64,000 nt of DNA, from positions 1 through 64,000 of the IMG/VR virus record IMGVR_UViG_3300023175_000005. One strand, given 5' to 3'. The stretch's first letter is position 1, and each line of letters starts with the position of its first letter. This document shows, one piece after another, positions 1-12,446 of this stretch. Below the pieces are notes generated by a model, which was given only the letters and a program-made list of their open reading frames with translations, was not told the DNA's origin and searched no databases. Position numbers and translations under genes: made by a program.

Positions 1-11
1 AACGGCTTCGA

Positions 12-362
12 TTTCAATGGCTTACACGGTGATCCTCAGGTGGCCCCTGAGGGGCCTCACTGTGGTGTCACTTGTGAATCATCACATGAGGTTCACCTGC
101 TAACCGTTTGAATTTATTGAGAAAATCCTCTGCGGGGTCAGAAGGTTACTACCTTACTACTAGACTCTCTACTACTATAAGAGCGTCACCTAACCGTTTG
201 AAAACCGTGGAAAAAATCTCCCCTAGTACTACTACGCTACTATACACTTAACTACTATACTACTATAAGTTCAAGTTCATCCACTACTACACTATACACA
301 CAACTCATGTCTTTATAAGTCTTTGTTTCTAATGGATTCTTTTGGCCACTAAGTCATTGTTT
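12..362. promoter_or_regulatory. Cluster of five IHF-consensus-like sites
   Basis: TTTCAATGGCTTA 12-24; TAACCGTTTGAA 101-112 and 191-202; TAAGTCTTTGTTT 316-328; TAAGTCATTGTTT 350-362. Each is about one mismatch from WATCAANNNNTTR or its complement. Confidence 0.5.
146..300. repeat. CTACTA/CTACTATA low-complexity repeat tract
   Basis: Multiple CTACTACTATA / CTACACTATAC copies in a gene-free region. Confidence 0.7.
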
Positions 363-468
363 TTGTTGGATTCTTTTTTTCATTTTTATATAAAATAAAG
401 CTTGCGTATATGTGTAGTTGTGTTATATTAGTAGTATGTTAACAAAAATGCATATAGGAGGGCAACAT

Positions 469-783
469 ATGCTAAATGGACAAGTTTGTTTAACGGAAGC
501 AGTGCGTGTAGTACTAGTAGAAGAAGACGCACAATGGAAGGCGGAGTTTGAAAAATACGGCTACAACACAGACATGTGGGCAACATATGGGGAATTTGAC
601 GAGGAGTGGCGAGAAGACGTTTTTACAATAGACGTATTTGAAGACGAAACATATGGCTTTATATGCGGCAATGCTAGTGACAGGCGTGTATACGGATTTA
701 CAGTAGACGTGTACAAAGCAGAGGAAGCAGACGGCACGTATAGTTTTTGGATAACAAACGAAGACTACGCTACAATAGGATAA
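469..783 (+). CDS. Early acidic hypothetical protein (104 aa, no Pro)
   Basis: Own promoter; GGAGGGC RBS before ATG 469. Confidence 0.8.
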   Translation: MLNGQVCLTEAVRVVLVEEDAQWKAEFEKYGYNTDMWATYGEFDEEWREDVFTIDVFEDETYGFICGNASDRRVYGFTVDVYKAEEADGTYSFWITNEDYATIG

Positions 784-876
784 AAAAAAGTTTGCGCACA
801 GTGCATTTTTTGCTTGCATTGTGCGCAACTTGTGCTATAGTGTAACTACATTAACAACTGCACATAGTGAGGGCTT

Positions 877-1098
877 ATGCAAAAAAAACTTACACGCACA
901 CAAGTAAACGCAATTACACAAACGTTCCGCAATGCAACTACACTGCAACAACAACTGCACTACTTGCAAAACATGCAGTATAAAAATGGAAGCAGAGTGT
1001 ATGACGTAACGCATTGGGAGGAAGCTATTGAAAGTATTATAGAAGAATTGTGTGAGTGCATGGATGAAAGCGTGTTGCAACACTATAAAGTTTTTTAA
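877..1098 (+). CDS. Early hypothetical protein
   Basis: Promoter 814, RBS GAGGGC 869. Confidence 0.8.
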   Translation: MQKKLTRTQVNAITQTFRNATTLQQQLHYLQNMQYKNGSRVYDVTHWEEAIESIIEELCECMDESVLQHYKVF

Positions 1099-1182
1099 GC
1101 AAACGCAAAAAAAATGGTTGCACTGTAGCACAAGTTGTGCTATAGTGTAACTATAAACTAAACTAGCATAGAGAGGGCAATT

Positions 1183-1380
1183 ATGCAAAATGTTTTCGTT
1201 TTACAATTACAGGGCACAGGCGACAGTGAAACTGCTTGGGAAAATTTTGGCGTGTTTGCTACACAACAGGATTTAGAAAAACGCTTGCGAGAAATTAACA
1301 ACGACTATTTGGATACAGACTTACAGTTTTTTAGACTGTTTGACAATGCACGTATGGAAGTTTGGGAATTAAAAAAATAA
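1183..1380 (+). CDS. Early hypothetical protein
   Basis: Promoter 1118, RBS GAGGGC 1173. Confidence 0.8.
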   Translation: MQNVFVLQLQGTGDSETAWENFGVFATQQDLEKRLREINNDYLDTDLQFFRLFDNARMEVWELKK

Positions 1381-1451
1381 AAAAACACTTGACAAGCACT
1401 GTAGTACATGCTATAGTGCTTGTATAAACTAAACTAGCATAGGAGGGTTAT

Positions 1452-1799
1452 ATGCTAAAACTTACAAACAAATATGTTGAAATTGAACGTGACGAAGACT
1501 TGCAGGAGACTTGCACTATTACTGAGTATGCTGTGGAAGGCACAGTAAAACTTGCTATGGATAGCATTTGGAATTACACAGGCAGTGACACTGTGCGTGT
1601 GGATGGTATACAGATAAGAGAAACACTGTATGAAGAAGATGGTGATACTAGCATTATGGTGAACGTGGAGCATGATGCTGCATGGAACATATACACAGAC
1701 ACGGGCTTTGAACGTGCAATTAGTGAGGCGCTTGGTATGGATATTACATTTACAGAGCAAGGCATGCAAGACGACAACTATGCAAGCATGGAGGTGTAA
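1452..1799 (+). CDS. Early acidic hypothetical protein
   Basis: Promoter 1389, RBS GGAGGGT. Confidence 0.85.
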   Translation: MLKLTNKYVEIERDEDLQETCTITEYAVEGTVKLAMDSIWNYTGSDTVRVDGIQIRETLYEEDGDTSIMVNVEHDAAWNIYTDTGFERAISEALGMDITFTEQGMQDDNYASMEV

Positions 1800-1811
1800 T
1801 AACACACAGTA

Positions 1812-1878
1812 GAGGAAGTACTGCACTGTACAGTGTAGTACTTTCGTATACCTCGTCAGGCCCCGCTGTTGGGGTCCG
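1812..1878. repeat. Two inverted repeats (AAGTACTGCACTG-TA-CAGTGTAGTACTT; GGCCCC...GGGGTCC)
   Basis: Visible hairpins after the 1452-1799 gene. Confidence 0.6.
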
Positions 1879-1972
1879 GTTACCGGAAGTATTTTTTTTA
1901 AATTAGGGGTTGACAGGTGTGTGAGACTGTGTTATAGTATGTGTATAAGTTAACAAAACGCCGGAGGGCAAG

Positions 1973-2200
1973 ATGGCTACTGACTTACGTACAACAAACG
2001 AAGACTTTACAATGACACGCTTTTGGGCCGGCTTGGAGCAGAAGGTCCAGGTTACACAGCCGCGTGGTAACACTAACTTAGGCAAGTTGCAGCAAACGGA
2101 CGAGTTCTTTACCAGTTTGCAGTTAACACGAGACGAGGCACGTGCATTAGCATTAGACTTGTTTAAGTTTGCTGAAGGACAGGAAACAGAACAATTTTAA
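1973..2200 (+). CDS. Early hypothetical protein
   Basis: Promoter 1910, RBS GGAGGGC. Confidence 0.8.
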   Translation: MATDLRTTNEDFTMTRFWAGLEQKVQVTQPRGNTNLGKLQQTDEFFTSLQLTRDEARALALDLFKFAEGQETEQF

Positions 2201-2269
2201 CATTAGGGGTTGACAGCCCCTAATTATTATAGTATAGTGTATATACAGTAACGAACAACGAGGGATACA

Positions 2270-2611
2270 ATGTTTGTAATTTACGAAAACTCATCAACAC
2301 TTATCATGGGCAAGCCAGATCGCCACGGCATTGTTCGTCCAGATTATCGTCAGTCTTATAAGACTATGGCAGCGGCTAAGGCAGCCGTCACACGCATGGC
2401 CAAACTGTGGAGAGCCAACTCACTGTCAGTGTACGAGTCACGAGACAATGATCCTGTGTTCAGGTATGCGATAGCCGAGAAGTCACTGTTCCATAACTTA
2501 ATCGAAAAGCGGCGTGTTCGAAAGAACCTGATGAACGATTCAGAGTTCGTCGAACCGGTGAACACACCTGCACACATGTCACCTGCTTGCGAAACCTATT
2601 GGAGTATGTAA
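2270..2611 (+). CDS. Early hypothetical protein (C-terminal SPACETYWSM)
   Basis: Promoter 2210, RBS GAGGGA. Confidence 0.85.
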   Translation: MFVIYENSSTLIMGKPDRHGIVRPDYRQSYKTMAAAKAAVTRMAKLWRANSLSVYESRDNDPVFRYAIAEKSLFHNLIEKRRVRKNLMNDSEFVEPVNTPAHMSPACETYWSM

Positions 2612-2612
2612 G

Positions 2613-2792
2613 ATGAAAGATGTAGCATTGAACTTGGAAAAGCTAGACAACACTCTAGACACGGTAGAAGAACTCGTTCGGGGTCTTTCACTTCGGCCGC
2701 AAGATGAAAAGAGATTGACCGATCTAATCTACGACTTTTGGATGGATGTAGAAGAGTCGGTGGAACTGGCTCCTACAGATTTTCCAAATTAG
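2613..2792 (+). CDS. Small acidic protein, 59 aa (MKDVALNLEK...), below the ORF-track cutoff
   Basis: GGAG RBS; ATG immediately after the upstream stop; translated by hand. Confidence 0.7.
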   Translation: MKDVALNLEKLDNTLDTVEELVRGLSLRPQDEKRLTDLIYDFWMDVEESVELAPTDFPN

Positions 2793-2861
2793 GGGTTGAC
2801 ACAGTGCAGCCCCTATGCTATAGTGTATGTATAGTTAGAAACGTACAAACGGAGGGCTCCA

Positions 2862-3074
2862 ATGTACAACATGTTTACTGAAGAAGGCAACACAAAAGTT
2901 GCAGCACTTGTAGCACAAGCACGCCAATTTGCAGATGTAGACGGTCCTTACAATGCCACAGAACAGGCATGGAATTGGCTGCTAAACGAGTTGGATGCAC
3001 TAGCACGTAATCCTGCTTTTGAAGAAGCAACAGATACAGCAGTGCGTGAAGCCTGCTACGACCGTTTCATATAG
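2862..3074 (+). CDS. Early hypothetical protein
   Basis: Promoter 2796, RBS GGAGGGC. Confidence 0.8.
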   Translation: MYNMFTEEGNTKVAALVAQARQFADVDGPYNATEQAWNWLLNELDALARNPAFEEATDTAVREACYDRFI

Positions 3075-3083
3075 GAGGGCAAG

Positions 3084-3383
3084 ATGGACATTTCCGATCT
3101 TCTTCAAATCATCGCAGTGGTAGCAGCACTAGATGGAGTTCAATCTGACTCTAACCACAACGGAGGTTGGCACGGCGATCATGATAACCCGCAACACGAA
3201 AACGTTGTGATCAATCCTTGGCACGGCAACTCGAGCGGTTACCACGACGGCCAGCTTTATGCACCTGCCAGCCAGTGTGCTAGTGTACGTGAACAGGTAA
3301 CCGACCTAGGCGACCGCTGGAAGATCACCACCATCGAGACCTGCCACGACACCGTTCGAGCAACAAGGTATCAGTGGAAGTAA
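3084..3383 (+). CDS. Hypothetical protein, hydrophobic N-terminus, His/Gly/Asn-rich
   Basis: RBS GGAGGGC 3074-3080. Confidence 0.75.
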   Translation: MDISDLLQIIAVVAALDGVQSDSNHNGGWHGDHDNPQHENVVINPWHGNSSGYHDGQLYAPASQCASVREQVTDLGDRWKITTIETCHDTVRATRYQWK

Positions 3384-3398
3384 TCAAGACCCCCCTGC

Positions 3399-3455
3399 TA
3401 AGTCATTGAAAACAAAGAGAAAATTATTTTGCAAAAAAATGCTAAGTGCTTGTTT
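3399..3455. promoter_or_regulatory. Pair of IHF-like sites
   Basis: TAAGTCATTGAAA 3399-3411 and TAAGTGCTTGTTT 3443-3455; same motif as 316/350. Confidence 0.5.
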
Positions 3456-3544
3456 TTAAACAAAACAAAAAGCTTTACAAGTGCGTATACTTGTGCTATT
3501 GTGTATGTATAAGTTAACTAATATGTATACAGAGGAGCATTAGT

Positions 3545-3790
3545 ATGCAAAACAAAGTATTTTTAAACGCACAAAACGCTGCAATTGTTGTAACAGTAAA
3601 CAACAAAGTTGTTGCTACAGACGTACAAACTGCAGACGCACTTGTGCAAGTGTTTTTAACACATAACATTAATGTGCTAAAAGACAATATTATGTGTAGC
3701 AGCAGCATAGACTTTGCAAGTGAAGAGGGCTTTGCTAGTGACGCAAGTGCGCATAATATAATAGACGCTGCATTTGACACATTAGCATAG
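3545..3790 (+). CDS. Early hypothetical protein
   Basis: Promoter 3474, RBS GAGGAG. Confidence 0.8.
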   Translation: MQNKVFLNAQNAAIVVTVNNKVVATDVQTADALVQVFLTHNINVLKDNIMCSSSIDFASEEGFASDASAHNIIDAAFDTLA

Positions 3791-3810
3791 CACTGCTATA
3801 CTAAAGTATT

Positions 3811-3844
3811 GCAAGCACTATACATAATAGTGCTTGCTTTTTTT
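3811..3844 (+). terminator. Intrinsic terminator overlapping the next -35
   Basis: GCAAGCACTAT-ACATA-ATAGTGCTTGC followed by a T-run. Confidence 0.7.
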
Positions 3845-3899
3845 GTTTTTTGTGTTATATTAATTGTATAACTTTAACAAGCATATAGGAGGGCTTTAT

Positions 3900-4067
3900 A
3901 TGCAAAAACAATATACACTAGAAGACTTTACTAATTTGGAGTACTACAACAAAATGCGCTGTGCAGACGGAGACGTTGTACAGTACATTGCAAAACGTAA
4001 ACGTGCTAAAACACACTGCCTAATTACTGTAAAAAATAACGTAGTACTAAAAGTGCAAAAATATTAA
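3900..4067 (+). CDS. Early basic hypothetical protein (55 aa)
   Basis: Promoter 3834, RBS GGAGGGC, ATG 3900. Confidence 0.75.
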   Translation: MQKQYTLEDFTNLEYYNKMRCADGDVVQYIAKRKRAKTHCLITVKNNVVLKVQKY

Positions 4068-4139
4068 AAAAACACTTGACAAGTGCTATAGTGTGTGCTA
4101 TAGTGCTTGTATAACGTAACAGCATATGGAGGGCTTTAT

Positions 4140-4409
4140 ATGCAAAATACTACTACTAAAACAGCACGTCAAATTGTGCGCAACATCTTAAAGCAAAACA
4201 ATGTTATGTATTCTCCGCACAGTTACACAAACAAATGTGCAAATCCTGCACTGCGTAACATTTGCTTCCTCACTAAAAACTTAACTCCTACAGTAGTGCA
4301 GCAAATTGCTTCTGCGCTTAATGTTAGCAAAGTACATGCTACCAAGCCTATGTTTTACAATGTGCATCCGGATGCACGTTATTTGCGTATAGTACATTGC
4401 GCAAAATAA
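4140..4409 (+). CDS. Early basic hypothetical protein (no Glu/Gly/Trp)
   Basis: Promoter 4076, RBS GGAGGGC, ATG 4140. Confidence 0.75.
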   Translation: MQNTTTKTARQIVRNILKQNNVMYSPHSYTNKCANPALRNICFLTKNLTPTVVQQIASALNVSKVHATKPMFYNVHPDARYLRIVHCAK

Positions 4410-4495
4410 TTTAAAAAAATGCAAATTAGGGGTTGACAAACGGCTCCTAGTTTGCTATACTATATGTATAGTTAGACGCAACGGAGGGCAATCCA

Positions 4496-4693
4496 ATGGC
4501 AGCAATCAAAATTTTTAACTCAGCATACCGTGACTCAGAAGAGCGTTGGTTGGAAATGGACGAAGTGAATGTAGTCACTATGAAGATGGACTACGACAAT
4601 GTTCCTTACATTTTGTTTGAGCACCGTGACTTTCCACTAGGCGCACTGAGCGCAACATTCACAGACGGCAACTGGTACTGTGATTTAAATTAG
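4496..4693 (+). CDS. Early hypothetical protein
   Basis: Promoter 4433, RBS GGAGGGC. Confidence 0.8.
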   Translation: MAAIKIFNSAYRDSEERWLEMDEVNVVTMKMDYDNVPYILFEHRDFPLGALSATFTDGNWYCDLN

Positions 4694-4759
4694 GGGTTGA
4701 CAGCATCTACAGAGATGCTATTATATAAACATAACGAAACAAAGCCATAGGAGGGTAAC

Positions 4760-5236
4760 ATGGCAACTCGTGCAAGAATTGGAATCGAAAACGCAGACGG
4801 TTCAATCACAACTTCATATCATCACTGGGACGGCTACCCAGCAGGCTTGGGTTTCAACCTAGTCAACAACTGGGCAGACGAAGACTTGCTTGGTGAGGCT
4901 ATCGCACTTGGTGACGCATCACATTGGGCAGACACTATTGGTTCAAAGACAGACTTTGACTGCCGTGACGATAACTATTACAAACAGAATGTCTACTACG
5001 GACGTGACCGTGGCGAGACAGGCGTAGATCCAATCATCTATGATACCTATGCTGTGTTTGAGAAATGCTTCCTACGCAACACACCTTGTGGTGAAGAGTA
5101 TGCTTATGTCTTGCGCTTGGACGGCACTTGGACACAGATTTCAGTATACCACAAAGAGGTCAAGCACGATGCGGAGGATTCAATCCGCACTGCCAAGGCT
5201 CAAATGCAACGATTGATTGATCAGGAGGCAGCATAA
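4760..5236 (+). CDS. Conserved phage early protein (MATRARIG...YHHWDGYP family)
   Basis: Recognisable Y-x-H-W-D-G-Y-P motif; promoter and RBS. Confidence 0.85.
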   Translation: MATRARIGIENADGSITTSYHHWDGYPAGLGFNLVNNWADEDLLGEAIALGDASHWADTIGSKTDFDCRDDNYYKQNVYYGRDRGETGVDPIIYDTYAVFEKCFLRNTPCGEEYAYVLRLDGTWTQISVYHKEVKHDAEDSIRTAKAQMQRLIDQEAA

Positions 5237-5742
5237 TGCCCAATTGGTGCAACAATTCATTCTCAATCACTGGTAACACTGAAAGCATCAAAGACCTTTG
5301 GGAGGCAGCACAGACTGCCGGCCCAGACGGTGGCTTTGGTTTGCTCAATGCAATCGCTCCTATCGGTGACTGGGAGTATGGTAAGGCTGTAGACACTTGG
5401 GGAACCAAGTGGGATGTCACTGACGAAGGTCTAGAGTTCATCGACAATGGTGACGGCACTGCTAGTATCTCAGGTTGGTTTGACTCAGCATGGTCTCCAC
5501 CTATTGGTGCTTACGAACAGTTGGCAGCGGACTTCGACTCGTGTATAATCGAGTGCTCCTACTACGAACCCGGTATGGACTTTGGTGGCTTTTGGTCTAG
5601 TGAGAACGGCGACGAAGAGTTTGACAATCTACAAGAGCGCTTAGAGCAGCCTACAGAAGAATGGGACGAGCGTTTCACAGCGTTCGAAGTAGAATACGAT
5701 CTACTGTCAGAAGAATGGCGTTTTGAAGAGGAGGAAGCGTGA
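5236..5742 (+). CDS. DUF1281/YubB-like ferredoxin-fold protein
   Basis: MPNWCNN, WGTKWD, FDSAWSPP, YYEPGMDFGG motifs. Confidence 0.8.
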   Translation: MPNWCNNSFSITGNTESIKDLWEAAQTAGPDGGFGLLNAIAPIGDWEYGKAVDTWGTKWDVTDEGLEFIDNGDGTASISGWFDSAWSPPIGAYEQLAADFDSCIIECSYYEPGMDFGGFWSSENGDEEFDNLQERLEQPTEEWDERFTAFEVEYDLLSEEWRFEEEEA

Positions 5743-5981
5743 AGATGTATATTGAAGGTTTAACAGAGGAGCAATGTGAAATGCTCGACAAGCTTTGGTC
5801 AATGGATACGGTAGAAGAAGTCAACGAGTTTCGCAACACTCTTCCTCGTTTCCGCCAACAGCAGATCGATACACTGATGGAATTGGTTATCCATGAGATG
5901 AAAGAAAAAGAACTGTCTCTAATGGAACGCTATCCCGAAGCAGAAGAAATGCTAGAAAGATTGAAAAAAGATTTCCTTTAG
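5739..5981 (+). CDS. Hypothetical protein
   Basis: GTG start coupled to the upstream stop; GGAGG RBS. Confidence 0.75.
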   Translation: MKMYIEGLTEEQCEMLDKLWSMDTVEEVNEFRNTLPRFRQQQIDTLMELVIHEMKEKELSLMERYPEAEEMLERLKKDFL

Positions 5982-6043
5982 GGGTTGACACTGCTGCTGT
6001 AGATGCTATAGTGTATGTATAAGTTGAAACGAGGGCAGTTACA

Positions 6044-6193
6044 ATGACAAAAGAAAACACAGGCGAAGCATTTGGTTACTTCCTAATTGTATTATTTGCA
6101 CTAGGATGGATGGATGTGCTTTGGGTATTTGGAATTGAAAACAGCAAGGACTACACATGGTGGAACTTGATACAGTATTTGGGGAATCTCTAG
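6044..6193 (+). CDS. Small membrane protein, 49 aa
   Basis: Promoter 5985, RBS GAGGGC 6031; hydrophobic ORF translated by hand. Confidence 0.7.
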   Translation: MTKENTGEAFGYFLIVLFALGWMDVLWVFGIENSKDYTWWNLIQYLGNL

Positions 6194-6195
6194 GT

Positions 6196-6348
6196 ATGAA
6201 CGATCTAATCGAAATTGTAGAAGACTTGGAATCAATCGAACTGCACGGTGTAGATAGCACTGCGTTCGAAGCAATCATTGAGAAATGGGAACAGCGTAAG
6301 ACAGAAGCCGAAGAGTTTTTGGAACGTCAATTCGAGATGGAGGTATAA
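6196..6348 (+). CDS. Small acidic protein (MNDLIEIVED...)
   Basis: ATG directly after the upstream stop. Confidence 0.65.
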   Translation: MNDLIEIVEDLESIELHGVDSTAFEAIIEKWEQRKTEAEEFLERQFEMEV

Positions 6349-6350
6349 AC

Positions 6351-6510
6351 GGAACAAGGCAATATTGAGTGGTGGTCAAACCCCTGGTTCTAAAGTTCCA
6401 AAAATGACGTAAAGAGATATATTGCCTGTGGTAGCCTGCGCCACGTTAGAAAATAAGATTGGGCTTAGAGGGTCTGTAGCCTGGCGCAGACGATAAACTT
6501 CGCCCAGGTA
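6351..6510 (+). ncRNA. Candidate structured RNA upstream of the tRNAs
   Basis: Stems AGGCAATAT/ATATTGCCT, GTGG/CCAC, TGGGC/GCCCA, GTCTG/CAGAC; no sense ORF. Confidence 0.4.
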
Positions 6511-6513
6511 CTA

Positions 6514-6600
6514 GCCTCCATGGTGGAATAGGTAGACACAAGAGACTTAAAATCTCTCGCTGATTACAGCGTCCCAGTTCGAGTCTGGGTGGAGGCACCA
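6514..6600 (+). tRNA. tRNA-Leu (TAA)
   Basis: Acceptor GCCTCCA/TGGAGGC, anticodon arm AGAGA-CTTAAAA-TCTCT, long variable arm, GTTCGAGTC T-loop, encoded CCA. Confidence 0.97.
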
Positions 6601-6613
6601 ATCTTTTTTTGAC

Positions 6614-6690
6614 GGTTGCGTAGCTCAACTGGATAGAGCAACAGACTTCTAATCTGTAGGTTGAGGGTTCGAGTCCTTCCGCAATCGCCA
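6614..6690 (+). tRNA. tRNA-Arg (TCT)
   Basis: Acceptor GGTTGCG/CGCAATC, anticodon arm ACAGA-CTTCTAA-TCTGT, GTTCGAGTC T-loop, encoded CCA. Confidence 0.97.
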
Positions 6691-6774
6691 AAAAAAGATT
6701 AAAAAAGTGGTTGACAATATATCTACTGATGCTATTGTATATGTATAGGGCAACTAAACAACGAGGGCTTAGAA

Positions 6775-7089
6775 ATGTTCGTAGTTAAGACACAGATTTT
6801 AGAAAACTATGGTGCACACAGCGAAGACGGCCGTTTTGCCTCAGGCAATGCGTACTGGAAGATGAAAGGCGGCAACGAGTATATCGTTCGTGACCTTGAT
6901 CGTCCGCAGGATGCTATGGCGTTCGTGGCTGCCAAGTTCATCGAGAACAACATCGCATTCAAGGAGTTTCCAATTGAGGTAATCACTTGGGAAGAATGGC
7001 AAGCGGAACTTAACGATCTCGACGAAGACTATCGCGAGTTCCTAGTAGAGCAGGCTATTGCTTGCTCACCCGTAGCGGAGGCAGCGTAA
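6775..7089 (+). CDS. Conserved phage early protein (TQILENYGAH...YWKMKGG)
   Basis: Promoter 6711, RBS GAGGGC. Confidence 0.85.
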   Translation: MFVVKTQILENYGAHSEDGRFASGNAYWKMKGGNEYIVRDLDRPQDAMAFVAAKFIENNIAFKEFPIEVITWEEWQAELNDLDEDYREFLVEQAIACSPVAEAA

Positions 7090-7241
7090 TGGAGCAGAGC
7101 GTAATCACAGTCACCATCGTGCTAGCCACACTGCTAGCCGTTGGACTGTTCATTAACGTAGTTCAGTTCGTATCCCGTCCGTGGGTACTGGTATTACTGT
7201 TCGGAGTGCTTGGCTGGTTTTTATTCGCCAGTACACTTTAG
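7089..7241 (+). CDS. Small two-helix membrane protein, 50 aa
   Basis: TAATG coupling, GGAGG RBS, hydrophobic; translated by hand. Confidence 0.7.
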   Translation: MEQSVITVTIVLATLLAVGLFINVVQFVSRPWVLVLLFGVLGWFLFASTL

Positions 7242-7302
7242 AGGTTGACAAATGCATTTTAGAACGTATACTGATAACAATTGTAAAACACATGAGGGCA
7301 AC

Positions 7303-8298
7303 ATGAATATAGAAATTATCGATGGCGAATACAATATCAAAGGGAAACCAACACCTATGAACGGTTTGATGTTTCCTCTAGTCGAAGAGTTTAAAATTGG
7401 GACGGGGGGCGGCTATGTCACGGTTGACGCTAGACCAGTCGCTGGCTTGCCGGATCGTAACATTAAGATCCGAGTTGCCAATGCAGACGCCTACAAGAAA
7501 GCAGGTGAGTCTACAGTCGCCCCCCAGGCAGAGACCGATGAACAGACCATTGAACGGTTGCGTGAACGGTTCCTAATGCTAGAGGACATGACCAAAGCAG
7601 TCAAGAAAGGCGATGTACGTGCAATGATCGTATCAGGACCTCCAGGTGTCGGTAAGAGTCACGGTATCGAACAAGTACTAGATCGATACAAGACCATGGA
7701 GGCACTTGGCGGTGAGAAGAAGTACGAAGTAGTCAAAGGCGCAATGAGTCCGATCGGCTTGTACTGTAAACTCTACAAGAATTCAGCCAAAGGCAACGTT
7801 ATTGTGTTCGACGACTGCGACTCAGTATTCAACGACGAACTATCGCTGAACATCCTAAAGGCTGCTCTGGATTCAAAGAAGACCAGAACAATCCATTGGA
7901 ACACTGATTCGTTCAAATTGCGCAACGAAGGTGTGCCAGATCAGTTCAAGTTCGAAGCCAGTGCGATCTTTGTTACTAACCTTAAGTTCGACAAAGCCAA
8001 GGGCAAGATCCGTGAGCACTTGCAGGCACTAGAGAGTCGCTGCCACTACATGGATTTGACTATCGATACCGATAGAGAAAAGATGCTCAGAATTCAGCAG
8101 ATCGTCGGTGACGGCATGCTAAATGATTATAAGTTTGCGAAAGAGGTAGTCGCAGATATTGTCGACTTCGTAGACATTAATAAAAATAGACTGAGAGAAC
8201 TGTCACTACGTACAGTGCTCAAAGTCGCAGACCTAGCCAAAGCTTTCCCTACTCGTTGGGAAGCAATGGCAGAGAATACTGTGATGAGACGTGGTTAG
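7303..8298 (+). CDS. AAA+ P-loop ATPase
   Basis: Walker A GPPGVGKS, Walker B VIVFDDCD, ALESRC; RBS GAGGGC gives ATG 7303. Confidence 0.9.
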   Translation: MNIEIIDGEYNIKGKPTPMNGLMFPLVEEFKIGTGGGYVTVDARPVAGLPDRNIKIRVANADAYKKAGESTVAPQAETDEQTIERLRERFLMLEDMTKAVKKGDVRAMIVSGPPGVGKSHGIEQVLDRYKTMEALGGEKKYEVVKGAMSPIGLYCKLYKNSAKGNVIVFDDCDSVFNDELSLNILKAALDSKKTRTIHWNTDSFKLRNEGVPDQFKFEASAIFVTNLKFDKAKGKIREHLQALESRCHYMDLTIDTDREKMLRIQQIVGDGMLNDYKFAKEVVADIVDFVDINKNRLRELSLRTVLKVADLAKAFPTRWEAMAENTVMRRG

Positions 8299-8390
8299 CC
8301 CTCAGCCTTTCCTCTCACAGTTGGTGTAGCAGCGTTGCCCTCACGCTCTGCACATTAGCGCTCGCAGGACCGCCCTCATCCTGCGGGCGC
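8279..8390 (+). ncRNA. Triple-hairpin RNA with GCCCUC loops (candidate anti-RBS sRNA)
   Basis: Hairpins 8279-8320, 8324-8353 and 8358-8390; GCCCTC in the loops at 8298, 8337 and 8372. Confidence 0.65.
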
Positions 8391-8464
8391 ATTCATTTTA
8401 AATTTTCGGTTGACACAAGTTTGATTGATGCTATTATAAATGTATAGCAAGAGAGGGCAATCAA

Positions 8465-8833
8465 ATGCTTATTACAAAAGACACCGACGCACAAGCAGCA
8501 CAGCCAAGTTGGATTGTGCTAGAAGACATTGCACGCCGTGCAGCACATGCCTACAACACACACCAAGAGTTGTTTGACAGTGCAGAGCACCAAGAACGTG
8601 TAGCACAAGCAAAAGAAATTTGTCGTGCGTACTTTGCAGGCTGGAGTGCAATATACGAAACAGCACGCCAACAAACAAGCCGCCGTGCAGCACACACTGA
8701 ACTCAAGTTCAATCGAGTTGTACTGCGCAAAACACGCAACAGAGATCGTTGGCTAGAAAGCCTACGTGCAATTGGCATTGACGAAGTTGTCTACAAGCCG
8801 GCAACAGAAAGTTACAGCCTACACATTAGGTAA
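8465..8833 (+). CDS. Early hypothetical protein
   Basis: Promoter 8410, RBS GAGGGC. Confidence 0.85.
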   Translation: MLITKDTDAQAAQPSWIVLEDIARRAAHAYNTHQELFDSAEHQERVAQAKEICRAYFAGWSAIYETARQQTSRRAAHTELKFNRVVLRKTRNRDRWLESLRAIGIDEVVYKPATESYSLHIR

Positions 8834-8844
8834 GGAGTTACTGT

Positions 8845-9051
8845 ATGACTTGGGAAGTTAGAGCACAAAGAAGCACAAGAGAAGCCTGCGTCAACAGTGA
8901 AGAGTTGGGCTGGAGCAGTGTTTTTGTTGATACACAAGCGGAAGCGGAAGCATGGTTCGAGTGCAGAACTAGAGGCAGAAGATTGGAAAGAAGTGTTCAT
9001 GTCTTGTTCGATCCCACAGGTGCTGTTCAAAGAGTTGCATTTTGTGGTTGA
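8845..9051 (+). CDS. Hypothetical protein
   Basis: AAGGAG RBS. Confidence 0.7.
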   Translation: MTWEVRAQRSTREACVNSEELGWSSVFVDTQAEAEAWFECRTRGRRLERSVHVLFDPTGAVQRVAFCG

Positions 9052-9112
9052 CACGGGTTGCCCTGTGTGCTATATTATAAACATAGGGCAACAGCAAAAG
9101 AGGGTTTTGCAA

Positions 9113-9271
9113 ATGGACTACAGAGACTTCGCAATTGAACTAGTAGAAGATATGGGCTACGATGCCAAAGACATGTTGATTGCTGCGCTTAAATATATGT
9201 CGCAAGACGATGTAGAAGACATGCTATACATCAACGAATATCCACTTGCACCGTGTGAGGAGGCAGCGTAA
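9113..9271 (+). CDS. Small acidic phage protein (ALKYMSQDDVEDML)
   Basis: Promoter 9048 and RBS GAGGGT give ATG 9113. Confidence 0.8.
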   Translation: MDYRDFAIELVEDMGYDAKDMLIAALKYMSQDDVEDMLYINEYPLAPCEEAA

Positions 9272-9465
9272 TGGGCTATCGCATTCTAAACATTGATCCG
9301 GAATTCCGTGCTAAGTTTGAAGAACGCAAAGGACTGGAAGGTCCGTTCTTCTACGATGGCAACGATGTGTTGTATTATGATCCTCGTGAAGGTGCTTACC
9401 TAGATCCCCGCACAGATCAATATCTAACCTACACAGAATATCAGGAGCGCACATGTACTACGTAA
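9271..9465 (+). CDS. Small phage protein (GLEGPF...LYYDPREGAY)
   Basis: TAATG coupling, GGAGG RBS. Confidence 0.8.
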   Translation: MGYRILNIDPEFRAKFEERKGLEGPFFYDGNDVLYYDPREGAYLDPRTDQYLTYTEYQERTCTT

Positions 9466-9572
9466 TGGAACCCGACGGCACTGTTTTTGCTATATGTTCA
9501 CGACTCAAAGACGCAGAAGCAATGTGTCATCGAGTAGGAAAAGAATCAAAAAAATACATCAAAAAAGGTTGA
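9453..9572 (+). CDS. Small hypothetical protein, 39 aa
   Basis: AGGAG RBS; translated by hand. Confidence 0.55.
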   Translation: MYYVMEPDGTVFAICSRLKDAEAMCHRVGKESKKYIKKG

Positions 9573-9628
9573 CAACACATCTAGTGATGTTAATATAAAT
9601 GTATAGGGCAACAACACAAGAGGGTGTT

Positions 9629-9901
9629 ATGAAAAATCTAAAACAATACGTTGAACAGCAGAACTCATGGAATGCAATCTTTGGTCAGTCACCACTGCCA
9701 ATGCCACTGAGTCAAGCAGGTGTTAACTCAATTGCAAACTCAATTGACGCAGGCTTGTCACCAGAGAACTTGCACTGCGATGGAGAGATTTCAGCAACAG
9801 AAGCACGTAAGAAATACAATCGCTATCACCAAGTGCTGAAAGAACTGCGTGAATACGCACGTAAGAACTCAATGACCTTACCAGAGATGTGGTGCGCATA
9901 A
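9629..9901 (+). CDS. Conserved phage early protein (LSPENLHCDGE)
   Basis: Promoter 9569, RBS GAGGGT. Confidence 0.85.
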   Translation: MKNLKQYVEQQNSWNAIFGQSPLPMPLSQAGVNSIANSIDAGLSPENLHCDGEISATEARKKYNRYHQVLKELREYARKNSMTLPEMWCA

Positions 9902-10122
9902 TGGAAAACTATGAAGCAATCTATCGCTTGGAAGCAATCCAAGAACAGTTAAACGAACTAGGCAACGAAGCAGCCGAGATCTTCCGCGAGCACTTCCCTA
10001 GGCAATATCAAACAGGAGATGCATACGGTGCATTTTCATTCGGCTCTAGCTGGAACTCATATAACACTACACTGGAGACACTGATTGAAAGTGCTCGCAA
10101 TCAAGAGGAGGAGTTGGCATGA
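9901..10122 (+). CDS. Hypothetical protein
   Basis: TAATG coupling. Confidence 0.75.
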   Translation: MENYEAIYRLEAIQEQLNELGNEAAEIFREHFPRQYQTGDAYGAFSFGSSWNSYNTTLETLIESARNQEEELA

Positions 10123-10264
10123 AGCTGCATCTAATCAATCTTGCAAGTTCAGCAATGAGTGCAGCCGTAATCCTGGGCACGATCTTTTTGGCAGTAATTG
10201 GTTGACACTATCTCTAGAGATGTTAATATAAGATATAGAAACAATAGCAAGAGGGTAACACGCT

Positions 10265-10609
10265 ATGAACTACACTGTAACAGAACTTAAAGCAATCCTA
10301 ACAGAAGCACAAGAAGCAGCATACACTGCGGCTGACGCTTTTGAAAAGAAATACTTTCCGGACAACGGCTGGGGAGCATGTGGCTTTGCTTGGGTAGACA
10401 TTTGGGGCATTAAAGGCAACACCAAACTAGGTCGTGCTATGAAGGCAGCAGGCATAGAGAAAGACTACAAAGGTGCACACTCTATTTGGAACCCCAGCAA
10501 GTATCCTACACAGAACATAGACACGCTAGAAGCAGGTGCACGAGCAGCCGCTGATGTGTTTAAGCGTTACGGCTTTGACCGAGCATACGCAGGATCTAGA
10601 CTAGACTAA
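10265..10609 (+). CDS. Conserved phage early protein (GACGFAWV...SRLD)
   Basis: Promoter 10202, RBS GAGGGT. Confidence 0.85.
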   Translation: MNYTVTELKAILTEAQEAAYTAADAFEKKYFPDNGWGACGFAWVDIWGIKGNTKLGRAMKAAGIEKDYKGAHSIWNPSKYPTQNIDTLEAGARAAADVFKRYGFDRAYAGSRLD

Positions 10610-10649
10610 GGTCATACATAATTCGCACAAGACGGCGTATGATCCAAGG

Positions 10650-10681
10650 AGGCAATCAGAAATGGTTGCCTTTTTTCTTTT
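10650..10681 (+). terminator. Intrinsic terminator ending the early region
   Basis: AGGCAATCA-GAAA-TGGTTGCCT plus T-run. Confidence 0.85.
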
Positions 10682-10870
10682 CGAAAAAAATAAAAAAAAA
10701 TTTTCTCGAGGGGTGGGGAGAATATATATAAAAAATTTGACAACTACAGCACGTAGCGTAGCGCAAAAAATCATGGTGATGTAGAATCACCACCCAGAAT
10801 CTGTAAGTACTTTCCTTAAATTTTTCGCGCAGCAGATTTTTTACTCTACAGGACCCTTTTGGGCAATAAA

Positions 10871-11059
10871 CTATTCACTAGTTTGTTGCTCTGGCAAATT
10901 CCATTTATCCGGTCCTGTATACCATGAATCTATCCAATCAGGAGGATTCTGCATTATATCGCATATGTTGCATCCACTGCTTATTACGTACAGTATCGTC
11001 AACATCAGTATGGCTAGTGCTACCACTGCTATAGCATGTTTCGCATGTTCGTCCAACAT
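10871..11059 (-). CDS. Small membrane protein
   Basis: One TM-like segment; TATATA-N4-ATG upstream. Confidence 0.6.
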   Translation of the reverse strand: MLDEHAKHAIAVVALAILMLTILYVISSGCNICDIMQNPPDWIDSWYTGPDKWNLPEQQTSE

Positions 11060-11112
11060 ACTGTATATATAACCTCGACAAATAACGAGTCACGAAGTAT
11101 GAGTGCTACGAG

Positions 11113-11152
11113 TTATCGAGTGTAGCGAGATATTATCAAGTGTAACAAGATA
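11113..11152. repeat. 20-bp tandem repeat
   Basis: TTATCGAGTGTAGCGAGATA / TTATCAAGTGTAACAAGATA. Confidence 0.7.
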
Positions 11153-11283
11153 TATCAACGCTAAATAAAATCACTGCGTACAGTGCTTACTCGCAGTTTG
11201 AACACTCTAGTTAGTTTTGGAATAGTCATAGACCCAATTCGAAAAAAACAAACTAGCCGACACACTGTACGCATAATTACTAT

Positions 11284-11526
11284 ATGTTTCCAAGAAGACT
11301 ATATCCAGAAACGCATCGTACTGCGTATCAAATTCAAATATCATACGCTACAGCACCAATGGCTTGGGAATCACAAACACAGTATTGGGTACTACACTTG
11401 TACACTCAACACGGTGTAGATTCCTATCAGACTTCGGAGCGTACTATAGCATTTACGTGCGAGCGTGATAGAGCTTTTGCGAGTATGGTTATACAGGATA
11501 AGAACCGTTATTTAGTTACCCTTTGA
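11284..11526 (+). CDS. Hypothetical protein
   Basis: 80-aa ORF with a CATAAT box just upstream of the ATG. Confidence 0.5.
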   Translation: MFPRRLYPETHRTAYQIQISYATAPMAWESQTQYWVLHLYTQHGVDSYQTSERTIAFTCERDRAFASMVIQDKNRYLVTL

Positions 11527-11638
11527 TTTCGACACCGTTTAGCAGGTCGTTTGGTATCGTTTTACACGGTATCTAGGAAATTGTTTTGTTATAGTCATCA
11601 AGTACTGTGATACTCTAACTGAAATTTTTGCGTAGCAA

Positions 11639-11709
11639 ACGCTTCGCGCTGTTAGAAAAATCTGCGTACCGTTTCACGGCTTTTGGGAATCGCGCACCGC
11701 TTCGCGGCT
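11639..11709 (-). repeat. Three GAA-triloop mini-hairpins
   Basis: - strand CCGC-GAA-GCGG, CCGT-GAA-ACGG, CGC-GAA-GCG. Confidence 0.7.
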
Positions 11710-11989
11710 ATACGGGCTTGATGTGACTGTGTTGTAGTGCGAATATAGTGTGTTCTGGTTCAGTTGAGTCACAGTCTACATATATGTCACAACGGCAGTA
11801 TACATCACCGGGCAGTGTTTGTGAGTTGGATCTTTGTAATACCCACTCCCATGCATTTTCTTCTATGGTTTTGTAAACTGCTTCGCCAACTGCTCTGCGT
11901 ACCCATAACTGTTCTAGATTGGTGTTACGGTGCGACCATTTGTACTCACACTGAGCGAGATAGTAACGAACGATTGTGCCATTGTTCAA
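11708..11989 (-). CDS. Hypothetical protein
   Basis: AGGAG RBS, TTG start. Confidence 0.65.
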   Translation of the reverse strand: MNNGTIVRYYLAQCEYKWSHRNTNLEQLWVRRAVGEAVYKTIEENAWEWVLQRSNSQTLPGDVYCRCDIYVDCDSTEPEHTIFALQHSHIKPV

Positions 11990-12026
11990 AAGTATATACT
12001 CCTAACTTATATAGTTAGCAAACCGT

Positions 12027-12446
12027 CTAGAGGGGATATTCGAAATTCTGGCAACTTTCTCCTTTGCGTAGAAATGTTGCACCGTTTGAAATATGGAAGC
12101 GTTCTGCCATTTCAGTTAACGGTGATAGTGTAACCATTCGAGAATATAGATCTTGTGCATTGTCTCTTAGTTGGTTAATTATAGTCCTACCTGCACCTTT
12201 GTTATAACTCCAAACAGTATATGCAACACATACCGTACCTTCAGGATCAGATAATTCAAACATTTCTTGTTCTGTAATAGGAACATCTTTACACAGTGCA
12301 AAACACACAACAGCATCTACACGATCGTTGTTTTCAAGCACCACTATGCTTCGACCACCGCCCACACGTTTTTCAAATGGGATATGAGGACGTACTGGAT
12401 CCTCTGTAATTAAATCACGTTCATTAAATGTGATGTTTCTTATCAT
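12027..12446 (-). CDS. GNAT-like phage protein
   Basis: YTVWSYNKGAGR and TLSPLTEMAERFHISNGA resemble GNAT acetyl-CoA motifs. Confidence 0.6.
   Translation of the reverse strand: MIRNITFNERDLITEDPVRPHIPFEKRVGGGRSIVVLENNDRVDAVVCFALCKDVPITEQEMFELSDPEGTVCVAYTVWSYNKGAGRTIINQLRDNAQDLYSRMVTLSPLTEMAERFHISNGATFLRKGESCQNFEYPL

What the first reader, a model, noticed from the sequence alone, without database searches (positions are those of the whole stretch)
456..10260. Early genes share a non-canonical GAGGG(C/T) leader code
Seen: 18 of the 19 promoter-proximal early genes, plus the internal 3084 gene, have GAGGGH just before the start; the exception is 3545 (GAGGAG). Several lack the upstream G of GGAGG (tgagggc, cgagggc, agagggc), so the conserved part extends beyond what pairs with a standard anti-SD. 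Most translationally coupled early genes and the middle/late genes use ordinary GGAG/AGGAG. Inference: the extra GG(C/T) is a regulatory address for the 8279-8390 RNA or for an RNA-binding protein or nuclease (compare T4 RegB cutting GGAG in early mRNAs).
Basis: partly seen in the sequence, partly recalled or inferred. Interest (0 to 1): 0.7.

Follow-up and report, generated by a model that had tools for sequence, protein, structure and literature searches.

The report
Phage early-gene leader code and matching RNA
An uncultured jumbo phage marks nearly all of its early operons with a private ribosome-site variant (GAGGGC), and the same gene block encodes a conserved three-hairpin RNA whose loops all read the exact complement (GCCCUC), so one small RNA probably controls the translation of the whole early gene class.

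Summary
GAGGG[C/T] sits 3-9 nt before the ATG of 17 of 19 promoter-proximal early genes (one more has GAGGGA; gene 3545 has GAGGAG) and before internal gene 3084. It precedes only 3 of 245 other predicted genes in the 256.6-kb genome (p about 8e-22). Those other genes use AGGAG, GGAGA or AAGGA. Window 8279-8396, the 3' UTR of an AAA-ATPase gene, folds into three hairpins, each with GCCCUC in its loop (z = -4.7). In 71 distinct related IMG/VR loci (ATPase at least 64% identical), 66 carry 2-5 GCCCUC motifs at that position. The stems differ between loci: 41 of 41 model pairs show compensatory changes. About 60% of 700 distinct early leaders carry GAGGG and 64% carry AGGGC. In 17 more distant loci, including PA5oct, both the RNA and the leader code are absent, and one sublineage has reduced both. 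The best model is a 3'UTR-derived, multi-loop anti-leader sRNA that occludes the ribosome site of the first cistron of each early operon, an RNA counterpart of T4 RegB. It resembles cuckoo/CcsR and LhrC-type anti-SD sRNAs but belongs to no Rfam family. Transcription, pairing and the sign of the effect are untested, and the host is unknown.

The parts
8279..8320 (+). Hairpin 1 of the anti-leader RNA. The loop AGCCCUC holds GCCCUC at 8298-8303. The 5' arm is the last codons of the ATPase gene, and the stop codon TAG (8296-8298) overlaps the motif by one base.
   Evidence: MFE fold. The same arrangement occurs in relatives with different inner stems. Helices 2-4 of model R1 are 77-92% paired, with changes on both sides in every pair.
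8324..8353 (+). Hairpin 2. The loop UGCCCUC holds GCCCUC at 8337-8342. GUUGCCCUCA is a perfect 10-nt complement of the ATPase leader UGAGGGCAAC.
   Evidence: The module GCCCUCACGCUCUGC recurs in most relatives with a covarying 5' arm.
8358..8396 (+). Hairpin 3. A 12-bp stem with loop CCGCCCUCA (GCCCUC at 8372-8377), followed by a weak U tract. It is the likely intrinsic terminator and 3' end of the RNA.
   Evidence: In relatives the same hairpin is followed by T6-8. Helices 7-8 of R1 are 89-98% paired.
7303..8298 (+). AAA-ATPase gene (331 aa, PHROG 1250, function unknown). The RNA is its 3' UTR. Its own leader carries GAGGGCAAC (7294-7302), and its promoter is at 7245-7272.
   Evidence: It served as the anchor for finding relatives.
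458..463 (+). Leader motif GGAGGGC before ATG 469 (104 aa).
   Evidence: Predicted loop:TIR duplex -18.7 kcal/mol.
869..874 (+). Leader motif GAGGGC before ATG 877 (73 aa).
1173..1178 (+). Leader motif GAGGGC before ATG 1183 (65 aa).
1443..1448 (+). Leader motif GAGGGT before ATG 1452 (115 aa). Promoter at 1389-1417.
1964..1969 (+). Leader motif GAGGGC before ATG 1973 (75 aa). Promoter at 1910-1938.
2260..2265 (+). Leader motif GAGGGA before ATG 2270 (113 aa). Promoter at 2210-2238.
2852..2857 (+). Leader motif GAGGGC before ATG 2862 (70 aa). Promoter at 2796-2824.
3075..3080 (+). Motif GGAGGGC before internal gene ATG 3084 (99 aa). It is the only internal early gene with the code.
3532..3537 (+). 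The exception: GAGGAG before ATG 3545 (81 aa). Promoter at 3474-3502.
3889..3894 (+). Leader motif GGAGGGC before ATG 3900 (55 aa).
4129..4134 (+). Leader motif GGAGGGC before ATG 4140 (89 aa). Promoter at 4076-4104.
4484..4489 (+). Leader motif GGAGGGC before ATG 4496 (65 aa). Promoter at 4433-4461.
4751..4756 (+). Leader motif GGAGGGT before ATG 4760 (158 aa). Promoter at 4697-4724.
6031..6036 (+). Leader motif GAGGGC before ATG 6044 (49 aa). Promoter at 5985-6012.
6763..6768 (+). Leader motif GAGGGC before ATG 6775 (104 aa). Promoter at 6711-6738.
7294..7299 (+). Leader motif GAGGGC before ATG 7303 (the ATPase gene).
8453..8458 (+). Leader motif GAGGGC before ATG 8465 (122 aa). Promoter at 8410-8437.
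9100..9105 (+). Leader motif GAGGGT before ATG 9113 (52 aa). Promoter at 9048-9076.
9620..9625 (+). Leader motif GAGGGT before ATG 9629 (90 aa). Promoter at 9569-9596.
10251..10256 (+). Leader motif GAGGGT before ATG 10265 (114 aa). Promoter at 10202-10229. This is the last gene of the early block.

Best explanation
The early block (window about 400-10,600, + strand) consists of about 19 short operons. Each has a sigma-70-type promoter and a short, mostly unstructured leader of about 25-30 nt. The ribosome site of the first cistron is a private variant, RAGGGC(A), usually GAGGGC. Its GAGG or AAGG part can pair with a canonical anti-SD, but its GGC part cannot. The ATPase operon in the same block ends in a roughly 100-120-nt RNA (8279-8396) with three hairpins, each showing GCCCUC in its loop. 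The last hairpin is a terminator. I propose that this RNA, released or left over as a stable 3'UTR-derived sRNA, accumulates during the early period. Its loops then base-pair with the GAGGGC of the early leaders, with 6-10 bp and predicted duplexes stronger than leader:16S pairing. This would shut 30S subunits out of the first cistron. Coupled downstream cistrons, which use ordinary SDs, would fall silent through loss of coupling, Rho-dependent polarity or mRNA decay. Late genes lack the GGGC extension and escape. The net effect would be a timed, class-wide shut-off or dampening of early protein synthesis. Shown: the motif and its distribution, the RNA structure and its conservation, the complementarity, and the phyletic co-occurrence. 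Inferred: that the RNA exists as a discrete species, that it pairs with the leaders, and that the effect is repression.
For: The motif is restricted to promoter-proximal early genes: 17/19 versus 3/245. The same clustering occurs in five large relatives. Of 465 distinct GAGGGY+ATG sites in the clade, 91% have a promoter within 70 nt. Spacing to the ATG is SD-like, 4.8 +/- 1.6 nt after the hexamer. The RNA fold has z = -4.7, with all three GCCCUC in loops. Of 159 distinct GCCCUC units in relatives, 146 have at least 5 of 6 bases unpaired. Fifty-seven percent lie fully in hairpin loops, against 13% of GCCCTC elsewhere and 2.5% after flank shuffling. There are 43 distinct closing stems around the invariant motif. 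Covariance model R1 finds one copy in every clade locus, always just after the ATPase gene. On the model alignment, 85.5% of cells are paired and 41/41 pairs show compensatory change. The covariation score is 0.408, against 0.126 shuffled and 0.04-0.06 slid. Predicted loop:leader duplex medians are -14.9 kcal/mol for promoter-proximal early genes, -6.0 for other genes and -8.4 for leader:canonical anti-SD. The base after GAGGGC is A in 76% and T in 20%. The base before GCCCUC is U in 57% and A in 29%, which gives a frequent seventh pair. Orthologous ATPase leaders diverge completely except for RAGGGC. For co-occurrence, 66/71 clade loci have at least 2 GCCCUC and a median of 0.63 GAGGG-SD per kb, while 0/17 outgroup loci have either. 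The L043/L080 sublineage has 1 GCCCUC and 0.06-0.07 per kb. The leaders are predicted to leave the motif mostly accessible.
Against: There is no direct evidence that the RNA accumulates or has defined ends. The only expression data are metatranscriptome contigs. Their early-versus-adjacent depth step (2.6-3.8x) is barely larger than the step in DNA runs (2.2x). The core motif is invariant, so true covariation between RNA and targets cannot be tested. The flanking bases show no lineage-specific co-evolution. There is one RNA gene against about 20 strong promoters, so stoichiometry requires a stable or recycled RNA. Six to seven base pairs is a short seed. Some clade members keep many GAGGGC leaders with a single GCCCUC (L034/L036), and some lineages use GAGGGA leaders (L107/L111) with unchanged loops. 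The host, its 16S tail, Hfq and its RNases are unknown. Pair counts were made on an alignment fitted to the model.
Confidence: 0.6

Rival explanations
1. The RNA pairs with the leaders, but the outcome is not repression. It might protect or stabilise early mRNAs, bridge the 5' and 3' ends of the ATPase mRNA in cis, or act as a surrogate anti-SD that favours early mRNAs.
For: The best complement (10 nt) is between loop 2 and the leader of the ATPase gene on the same transcript. Nothing computed here fixes the sign of the effect.
Against: Pairing directly over the SD normally blocks initiation, as in known anti-SD sRNAs (PMC4615179, PMC4132741). The leaders are already accessible, so nothing needs opening. 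A cis-only role does not explain about 20 other leaders per genome.
Confidence: 0.15
2. GAGGGC is recognised by a phage or host protein, such as a RegB-like endoribonuclease or RegA-like repressor. The complementary RNA is then unrelated or only modulates that protein.
For: T4 offers a precedent: RegB cuts GGAG in early SDs with an extended 3' context, and RegA represses early mRNAs (PMC3014915). Most early proteins here have no known function.
Against: No RegB, RegA, RNase III or RNA-binding family was found. A protein that reads GAGGGC would not be titrated by its complement. An exact complement shown 2-5 times in loops, in the same block and with the same phyletic range, would then be coincidence.
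Confidence: 0.1
3. There is no special regulation. GAGGGC is simply a good SD, inherited with a promoter-leader cassette that spread by duplication. The hairpins are terminators or mRNA stabilisers.
For: Every leader contains GAGG or AAGG, which pairs with a canonical anti-SD. Some window leaders are clearly similar to one another (GCATA-N-GGAGGGC at 469, 3084, 3900, 4140). Hairpin 3 is a terminator.
Against: Selection for 16S affinity would favour GGAGG, yet A precedes GAGGG in 62% and G in 17%. GGGC is kept even where GAGG is lost. Orthologous leaders have diverged everywhere else. Terminators do not need an invariant loop hexamer, repeated in non-terminator hairpins. RNA and code are lost together.
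Confidence: 0.1
4. GAGGGC/GCCCTC is a DNA-level site, for example for a DNA-binding or modifying protein, present in both orientations.
For: The two motifs are the same duplex site in opposite orientation.
Against: The leader copies keep SD-like spacing to the ATG. The opposite-orientation copies sit in covarying hairpin loops of one transcript, which is selection at the RNA level.
Confidence: 0.03

Closest known systems
Cuckoo / CcsR (RSs0680) RNAs of Rhodobacterales and Rhizobiales
   Same: The architecture is modular, with 2-4 adjacent hairpins. The only conserved sequence is a C-rich anti-SD-like loop motif. The stems are dominated by compensatory mutations. The RNA lies next to one conserved gene, and the number of hairpins varies between lineages (PMC4615179; compare).
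   Different: The loop motif is CCUCCUCCC, not GCCCUC. Cuckoo RNAs are chromosomal genes of Alphaproteobacteria, not phage genes, and their targets are host mRNAs with ordinary SDs. Here the targets appear to be the phage's own early leaders, which carry a matched private motif. No Rfam family matches.
UCCC-loop sRNAs of Firmicutes (S. aureus RNAIII and Rsa RNAs, Listeria LhrC)
   Same: C-rich motifs sit in several loops of one sRNA and pair with the SD region to block initiation (PMC2790875, PMC4132741).
   Different: They have a different motif and fold, with no homology. They are host regulators with a few targets rather than a class-wide address in about 20 operons.
T4 RegB endoribonuclease (and RegA repressor)
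   Same: The functional logic is the same. An early-expressed phage factor inactivates many early mRNAs at their SD, spares middle and late mRNAs, and acts on its own mRNA (PMC3014915). Here the ATPase-RNA transcript also carries the motif.
   Different: RegB is a protein nuclease that reads GGAG plus an A-rich 3' context. Here the candidate effector is an RNA, the discrimination lies in a GGC extension, and no RegB homologue was found (that family search rang in no control genome).
Phage P1/P7 c4 antisense RNA (from my own knowledge; not checked in a paper here)
   Same: It is a phage RNA processed from the same transcript as its target. Its loops pair with sites that include a ribosome site, and silencing spreads to downstream genes by polarity.
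   Different: c4 controls one operon (icd-ant) of a temperate phage, not a whole temporal class.
CsrB/RsmZ-type sponge RNAs
   Same: There are many hairpins with one repeated loop motif.
   Different: Those loops carry GGA and bind a protein (CsrA/RsmA). Here the loops are the complement of an SD-like motif and are suited to binding RNA.

Membership tests
Ordinary Shine-Dalgarno / anti-SD pairing as a full explanation of GAGGGC | The conserved bases are those that pair with the 16S 3' tail (CCUCC). | tested here: not met
   Only GAGG or AAGG can pair. GGC cannot. A rather than G precedes GAGGG in 62%. GGGC is kept where GAGG is lost. The median leader:canonical-tail duplex is -8.4, against -14.9 kcal/mol for leader:RNA loop.
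Ordinary Shine-Dalgarno / anti-SD pairing as a full explanation of GAGGGC | The host 16S tail is complementary to the motif. | not testable with these tools
   The host is unknown, because the genome is a metagenome-assembled IMG/VR record. Indirectly, 245 non-early genes use AGGAG, GGAGA or AAGGA, which fits a canonical tail.
Cuckoo / CcsR RNA family | The loop motif is CCUCCUCCC. | tested here: not met
   The loops read GCCCUC.
Cuckoo / CcsR RNA family | There are 2-4 modular hairpins, and the stems vary by compensatory change. | tested here: met
   There are 2-5 hairpins, 43 distinct closing stems, and 41/41 pairs with compensatory change.
Cuckoo / CcsR RNA family | There is sequence and structure homology (an Rfam model match). 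| tested here: not met
   cmscan of window 1-12000 at E up to 1 gave no hit in 8279-8396.
T4 RegB-type early-mRNA inactivation | A RegB endoribonuclease gene (PF10715) is present. | tested here: inconclusive
   There was no match in the 256.6-kb record, but the family rang in no control genome and the record is about 72% complete. No hit was found among 20 early proteins scanned against Pfam.
T4 RegB-type early-mRNA inactivation | The target motif lies in the SDs of early mRNAs and not of late mRNAs. | tested here: met
   17/19 versus 3/245. The motif differs, however (GAGGGC, not GGAG-RAYARAA).
Trans-acting anti-SD sRNA (functional class) | An accessible single-stranded seed is complementary to the target ribosome sites. 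| tested here: met
   The loops are unpaired in MFE folds, and the leaders have 6-10 nt of complementarity.
Trans-acting anti-SD sRNA (functional class) | A discrete stable transcript exists. | tested here: inconclusive
   A terminator-like 3' hairpin is present. Only unstranded metatranscriptome contigs are available, and their depth step is similar to that in DNA runs.
Trans-acting anti-SD sRNA (functional class) | Pairing changes the translation or stability of the targets. | not testable with these tools
   This needs reporter, toeprint or infection experiments.
CsrB/RsmZ protein-sponge RNAs | There are repeated GGA loop motifs that bind CsrA. | tested here: not met
   The loops are C-rich (GCCCUC).

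The most novel reading that the evidence does not exclude
A phage-private ribosome-site dialect is read by a phage RNA. One 3'UTR-derived RNA with 2-5 GCCCUC loops addresses the first cistron of about 20 early operons through a GGGC extension of their SD. It thereby times the shut-off of a whole temporal gene class without a protein regulator. The system is conserved across a widespread clade of roughly 250-360-kb marine and estuarine jumbo phages. A still bolder variant, which I rate at about 0.05, is that the RNA acts as a surrogate anti-SD that gives early mRNAs privileged access to ribosomes.
Probability: 0.5. Interest if true: 0.85.

Novelty: new variant of a known kind. Interest (0 to 1): 0.8.

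Why it matters
How large lytic phages end their early programme is known in molecular detail mainly for T4, which uses the proteins RegB and RegA. Here the sequence data point to an RNA-only solution. The phage gives its early operons a matched address that host and late messages lack, so a single small RNA can tell the gene classes apart. If confirmed, three things would follow. It would be the first class-wide, self-targeting sRNA regulon in a virulent phage. It would be a natural example of an orthogonal SD extension used for regulation. And it would be a compact, portable pair of parts (leader hexamer plus loop RNA) for synthetic control of many genes at once. The system is found in more than 70 distinct environmental contigs, so it belongs to an abundant but uncultured phage group. 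The hypothesis can be tested directly in E. coli-type systems, because the promoters and the SD core are canonical.

Tried and rejected
(1) Rfam search of window 1-12000 at E up to 1: only the two tRNAs and noise, nothing at 8279-8396.

(2) Pfam and PHROGs on 20 early proteins: an AAA-ATPase (PHROG 1250, function unknown) and a DUF1281_C domain. No nuclease or RNA-binding family was found.

(3) Pfam RNase III and RegB searched in the whole record: no match. The RegB search rang in no control genome, so it is uninformative.

(4) MAFFT plus RNAalifold on 14 RNA regions recovered only the two outer helices because the inner stems were misaligned. I replaced this with a covariance model and its structural alignment.

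(5) A test for lineage-specific co-evolution of the bases flanking the 6-mer, comparing own with foreign loops, was null (p = 0.33). Correlations of loop base -1 with leader base +7 across loci were also null.

(6) PA5oct (terminase 52% identical) and Vibrio phage D479 were examined as possible carriers of a different complementary code. Neither has an RNA after the ATPase homologue or a GAGGGC leader.

(7) Metatranscriptome contigs were laid on 5900-10700 and 7000-12900. The early block is present in RNA libraries at 19-21x against 5-9x next door. DNA runs show a similar step, the contigs have no strand and their depth is flat, so neither transcription nor a discrete sRNA is shown.

(8) Literature searches for GAGGGC or GCCCUC together with phage returned no papers.

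(9) The wobble argument, that Y at position 6 pairs with G, was dropped as weak. In the clade T (31) and A (24) are about equally rare after GAGGG.

(10) Host identification was not achieved. No close cultured relative is in the phage collection.

Full report
WHAT THE WINDOW IS. The window is the first 64 kb of a single 256,558-bp contig with 35.5% GC. The contig is an IMG/VR virus record that CheckV rates about 72% complete. It was assembled from salt-marsh metagenomes. Its terminase, tail sheath and helicases are myovirus-like. The nearest cultured relatives are the Pseudomonas jumbo phage PA5oct group, with only 52% terminase identity, so the host is unknown. Positions of about 400-10,600 form a + strand block of higher GC (43-45%). 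The block is packed with small genes of unknown function behind near-consensus sigma-70 promoters, TTGACA-N16-17-TATAnT, most with an extended -10 TG. I call these genes early by analogy. Their timing was not measured.

THE OBSERVATION. One search lists every GAGGG in the genome. Twenty of the 40 + strand copies lie between 458 and 10,256, and each sits 3-9 nt upstream of the ATG of a 49-331-aa ORF. Of the 19 promoter-proximal genes, 17 have GAGGG[CT], one has GAGGGA (2260), and gene 3545 has GAGGAG. Internal gene 3084 also has GGAGGGC, while the ten other internal or coupled genes have GGAG, AGGAG or GGAGG. Among 245 genes predicted outside the block, only three have GAGGG[CT] within 20 nt of the start (Fisher p = 7.8e-22). 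None of those three has a sigma-70 promoter nearby. The upstream regions of non-early genes are enriched for AGGAG, GGAGA, AAGGA and GGAGG, the complement of a canonical 16S tail.

THE MATCHING RNA. GCCCTC, the complement of GAGGGC, occurs ten times on the + strand of the whole genome. Three of those copies lie within 80 nt at 8298, 8337 and 8372, directly after the stop codon of the AAA-ATPase gene at 7303-8298. The stretch 8279-8399 folds into three hairpins at -51.1 kcal/mol, with z = -4.7 and no shuffle folding as well. Each GCCCUC lies in a loop of 7-9 nt. The 5' arm of hairpin 1 is the end of the ATPase coding sequence, and hairpin 3 looks like an intrinsic terminator. No Rfam family matches.

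COMPARATIVE EVIDENCE FOR THE RNA. The ATPase protein retrieved 76 IMG/VR loci at 65-79% identity, mostly from marine and estuarine samples. A second scan added more distant loci. In nearly every clade locus, the 100-250 nt after the ATPase stop holds 2-5 exact GCCCTC flanked by short inverted repeats that differ from locus to locus. Of 159 distinct units, 146 have at least five of the six bases unpaired in the MFE fold. Fifty-seven percent are entirely in a hairpin loop, against 13% of GCCCTC elsewhere in the same loci and 2.5% after flank shuffling. Forty-three different closing stems surround the invariant hexamer. A covariance model built from 14 sequences finds a hit just after the ATPase gene on its strand in almost every clade locus searched (not L043). 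It finds none in the PA5oct or Vibrio D479 loci. It also finds exactly one copy in each of five whole records. On the model's alignment of 65 distinct sequences, 85.5% of cells are paired and all 41 pairs show compensatory changes. The covariation score is 0.408, against 0.126 in shuffles (0 of 500 as high) and 0.04-0.06 with slid partners. The alignment is fitted to the model and the sequences are related, so these figures lean towards the structure. The diversity of stems around a fixed loop does not depend on that alignment.

COMPARATIVE EVIDENCE FOR THE LEADER CODE. In 708 distinct promoter-proximal leaders of the clade, 431 carry GAGGG. The sixth base is C in 376, T in 31, A in 24 and never G. 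The base before GAGGG is A in 62% and G in only 17%. Ninety-one percent of 465 distinct GAGGGY+ATG sites have a promoter within 70 nt. The spacing to the ATG is SD-like. In five large relatives the sites cluster in one 8-12-kb block that also contains the RNA. Orthologous ATPase leaders have diverged at almost every position except RAGGGC. Where GAGG is lost, AAGGGCA usually replaces it. Overall, AGGGC is present in 449 of 706 leaders. The part that cannot pair with a canonical anti-SD is thus the best-conserved part.

THE LINK BETWEEN THE TWO. (i) The complementarity is exact over six bases and often seven. A follows GAGGGC in 76% of leaders, and U precedes GCCCUC in 57% of loops. In the window it reaches 10 nt for the ATPase leader and loop 2. 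(ii) Predicted loop:leader duplexes have a median of -14.9 kcal/mol for promoter-proximal early genes. The median is -6.0 for other genes and -8.4 for the same leaders with a canonical 16S tail. (iii) The leaders are short and mostly leave the motif unpaired. (iv) Phyletic co-occurrence is strong. Sixty-six of 71 distinct loci with an ATPase at least 64% identical have two or more GCCCUC downstream, with a median of 0.63 GAGGG ribosome sites per kb. All 17 loci with an ATPase at most 60% identical have neither. Inside the clade, the L043/L080 sublineage has replaced the leaders with a different design: an AGGAGA SD, an upstream CUCC and a conserved small hairpin. It has one GAGGGC leader left, and its RNA is reduced to one GCCCUC hairpin and one CCCCUC hairpin. 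That amounts to one gain and one joint reduction. It is suggestive, but it is few independent events.

MECHANISM. The most economical reading is a trans-acting anti-leader sRNA derived from the 3' UTR of an early mRNA. Its loops occlude the ribosome site of the first cistron of every early operon. The GGC extension lets the RNA distinguish early messages from late and host messages. Placing the address only on the first cistron is sufficient, because downstream cistrons are translationally coupled or subject to polarity. This is the logic of T4 RegB, which cuts GGAG in early SDs, spares late mRNAs and targets its own message (PMC3014915), but carried out by an RNA. In form, the RNA is closest to the cuckoo/CcsR RNAs (2-4 hairpins, conserved anti-SD loop motif, stems full of compensatory changes, fixed neighbour gene; PMC4615179). 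It also resembles the UCCC-loop sRNAs of Firmicutes (PMC2790875, PMC4132741). It is not a member of any of these families, because the motif, the fold and the carrier all differ. The existence of a discrete RNA, the pairing itself and the sign of the effect are all inferred.

WEAKNESSES. Expression data are limited to unstranded metatranscriptome contigs. The early block is 2.6-3.8 times deeper than the adjacent region in RNA libraries but also 2.2 times deeper in DNA libraries, so transcription is not demonstrated. The core is invariant, so covariation between the RNA and its targets cannot be tested, and the flanks show no lineage-specific matching. Some lineages keep the leaders with a single GCCCUC, or use GAGGGA leaders with unchanged loops. 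The host and its 16S tail are unknown. My gene caller missed several early genes, so the early list was made by hand from the sequence.

VERDICT. The rivals are a non-repressive role for the same pairing (0.15), a protein reader (0.1), no special regulation (0.1) and a DNA-level site (0.03). I rate it a new variant of a known kind (anti-SD loop sRNAs), with interest 0.8.

Noticed in passing
window 7000-12770: In two DNA runs the contig depth is about 2.2-fold higher over the early block than just beyond it. X1 shows about 150-190 over the block against 76-79 beyond, and X2 about 76-98 against 42-44, with the step near 10.6 kb. The early block may be a collapsed long terminal repeat, as in T5 or SPO1, or may be shared by more strains.
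   Followed up: no
window 1903-1909, 2203-2209, 2789-2795, 4426-4432, 4690-4696, 5978-5984: TTAGGGG lies directly upstream of the -35 TTGACA of many early promoters, often overlapping the previous gene's stop codon. The same element recurs in relatives.
   Followed up: no
window 6748-6756, 9085-9093, 9601-9609: Three leaders begin with UAGGGCAAC. This is a second partial complement of the RNA loops, upstream of their GAGGGY ribosome site.
   Followed up: no
L043 3300-8700; L080: This sublineage has early leaders of a different design. After the -10 element comes a conserved small hairpin (CAGUGAGCGAACAGCUC), then CCAAUAACUCCAC, then an AGGAGA SD. The CUCC could sequester the GGAG in cis. Its post-ATPase RNA is reduced to one GCCCUC hairpin and one CCCCUC hairpin.
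   Followed up: partly
window 6514-6690: tRNA-Leu(TAA) and tRNA-Arg(TCT) lie inside the early block. They are preceded by about 160 nt of non-coding sequence (6350-6513) that relatives replace or skip.
   Followed up: no
window 1-400: The left end is non-coding. It has a direct repeat CACCT(GC)TAACCGTTTGAA at about 91-110 and 187-206, and a CTACTAC-rich stretch at 150-300. It is also the end of the contig.
   Followed up: no
window 1-10600 versus the rest: The early block has 43-45% GC and positive GC and AT skew, against about 35% GC for the genome. My codon model, trained on long genes, missed several early genes.
   Followed up: no
L017 2190-3083: In one relative an insertion of about 600 nt separates the ATPase gene from the RNA. 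The covariance model finds the RNA at 2818-3083.
   Followed up: no
window 7303-8298: The ATPase (PHROG 1250, function unknown) has homologues in more than 1,300 phage records, including T4-like phages and PA5oct, where one record annotates it as thioredoxin. Only the marine clade couples it to the RNA.
   Followed up: partly
window 5236-5742: An early protein carries a DUF1281_C ferredoxin-like domain (Api92-like), E = 1.3e-8.
   Followed up: no
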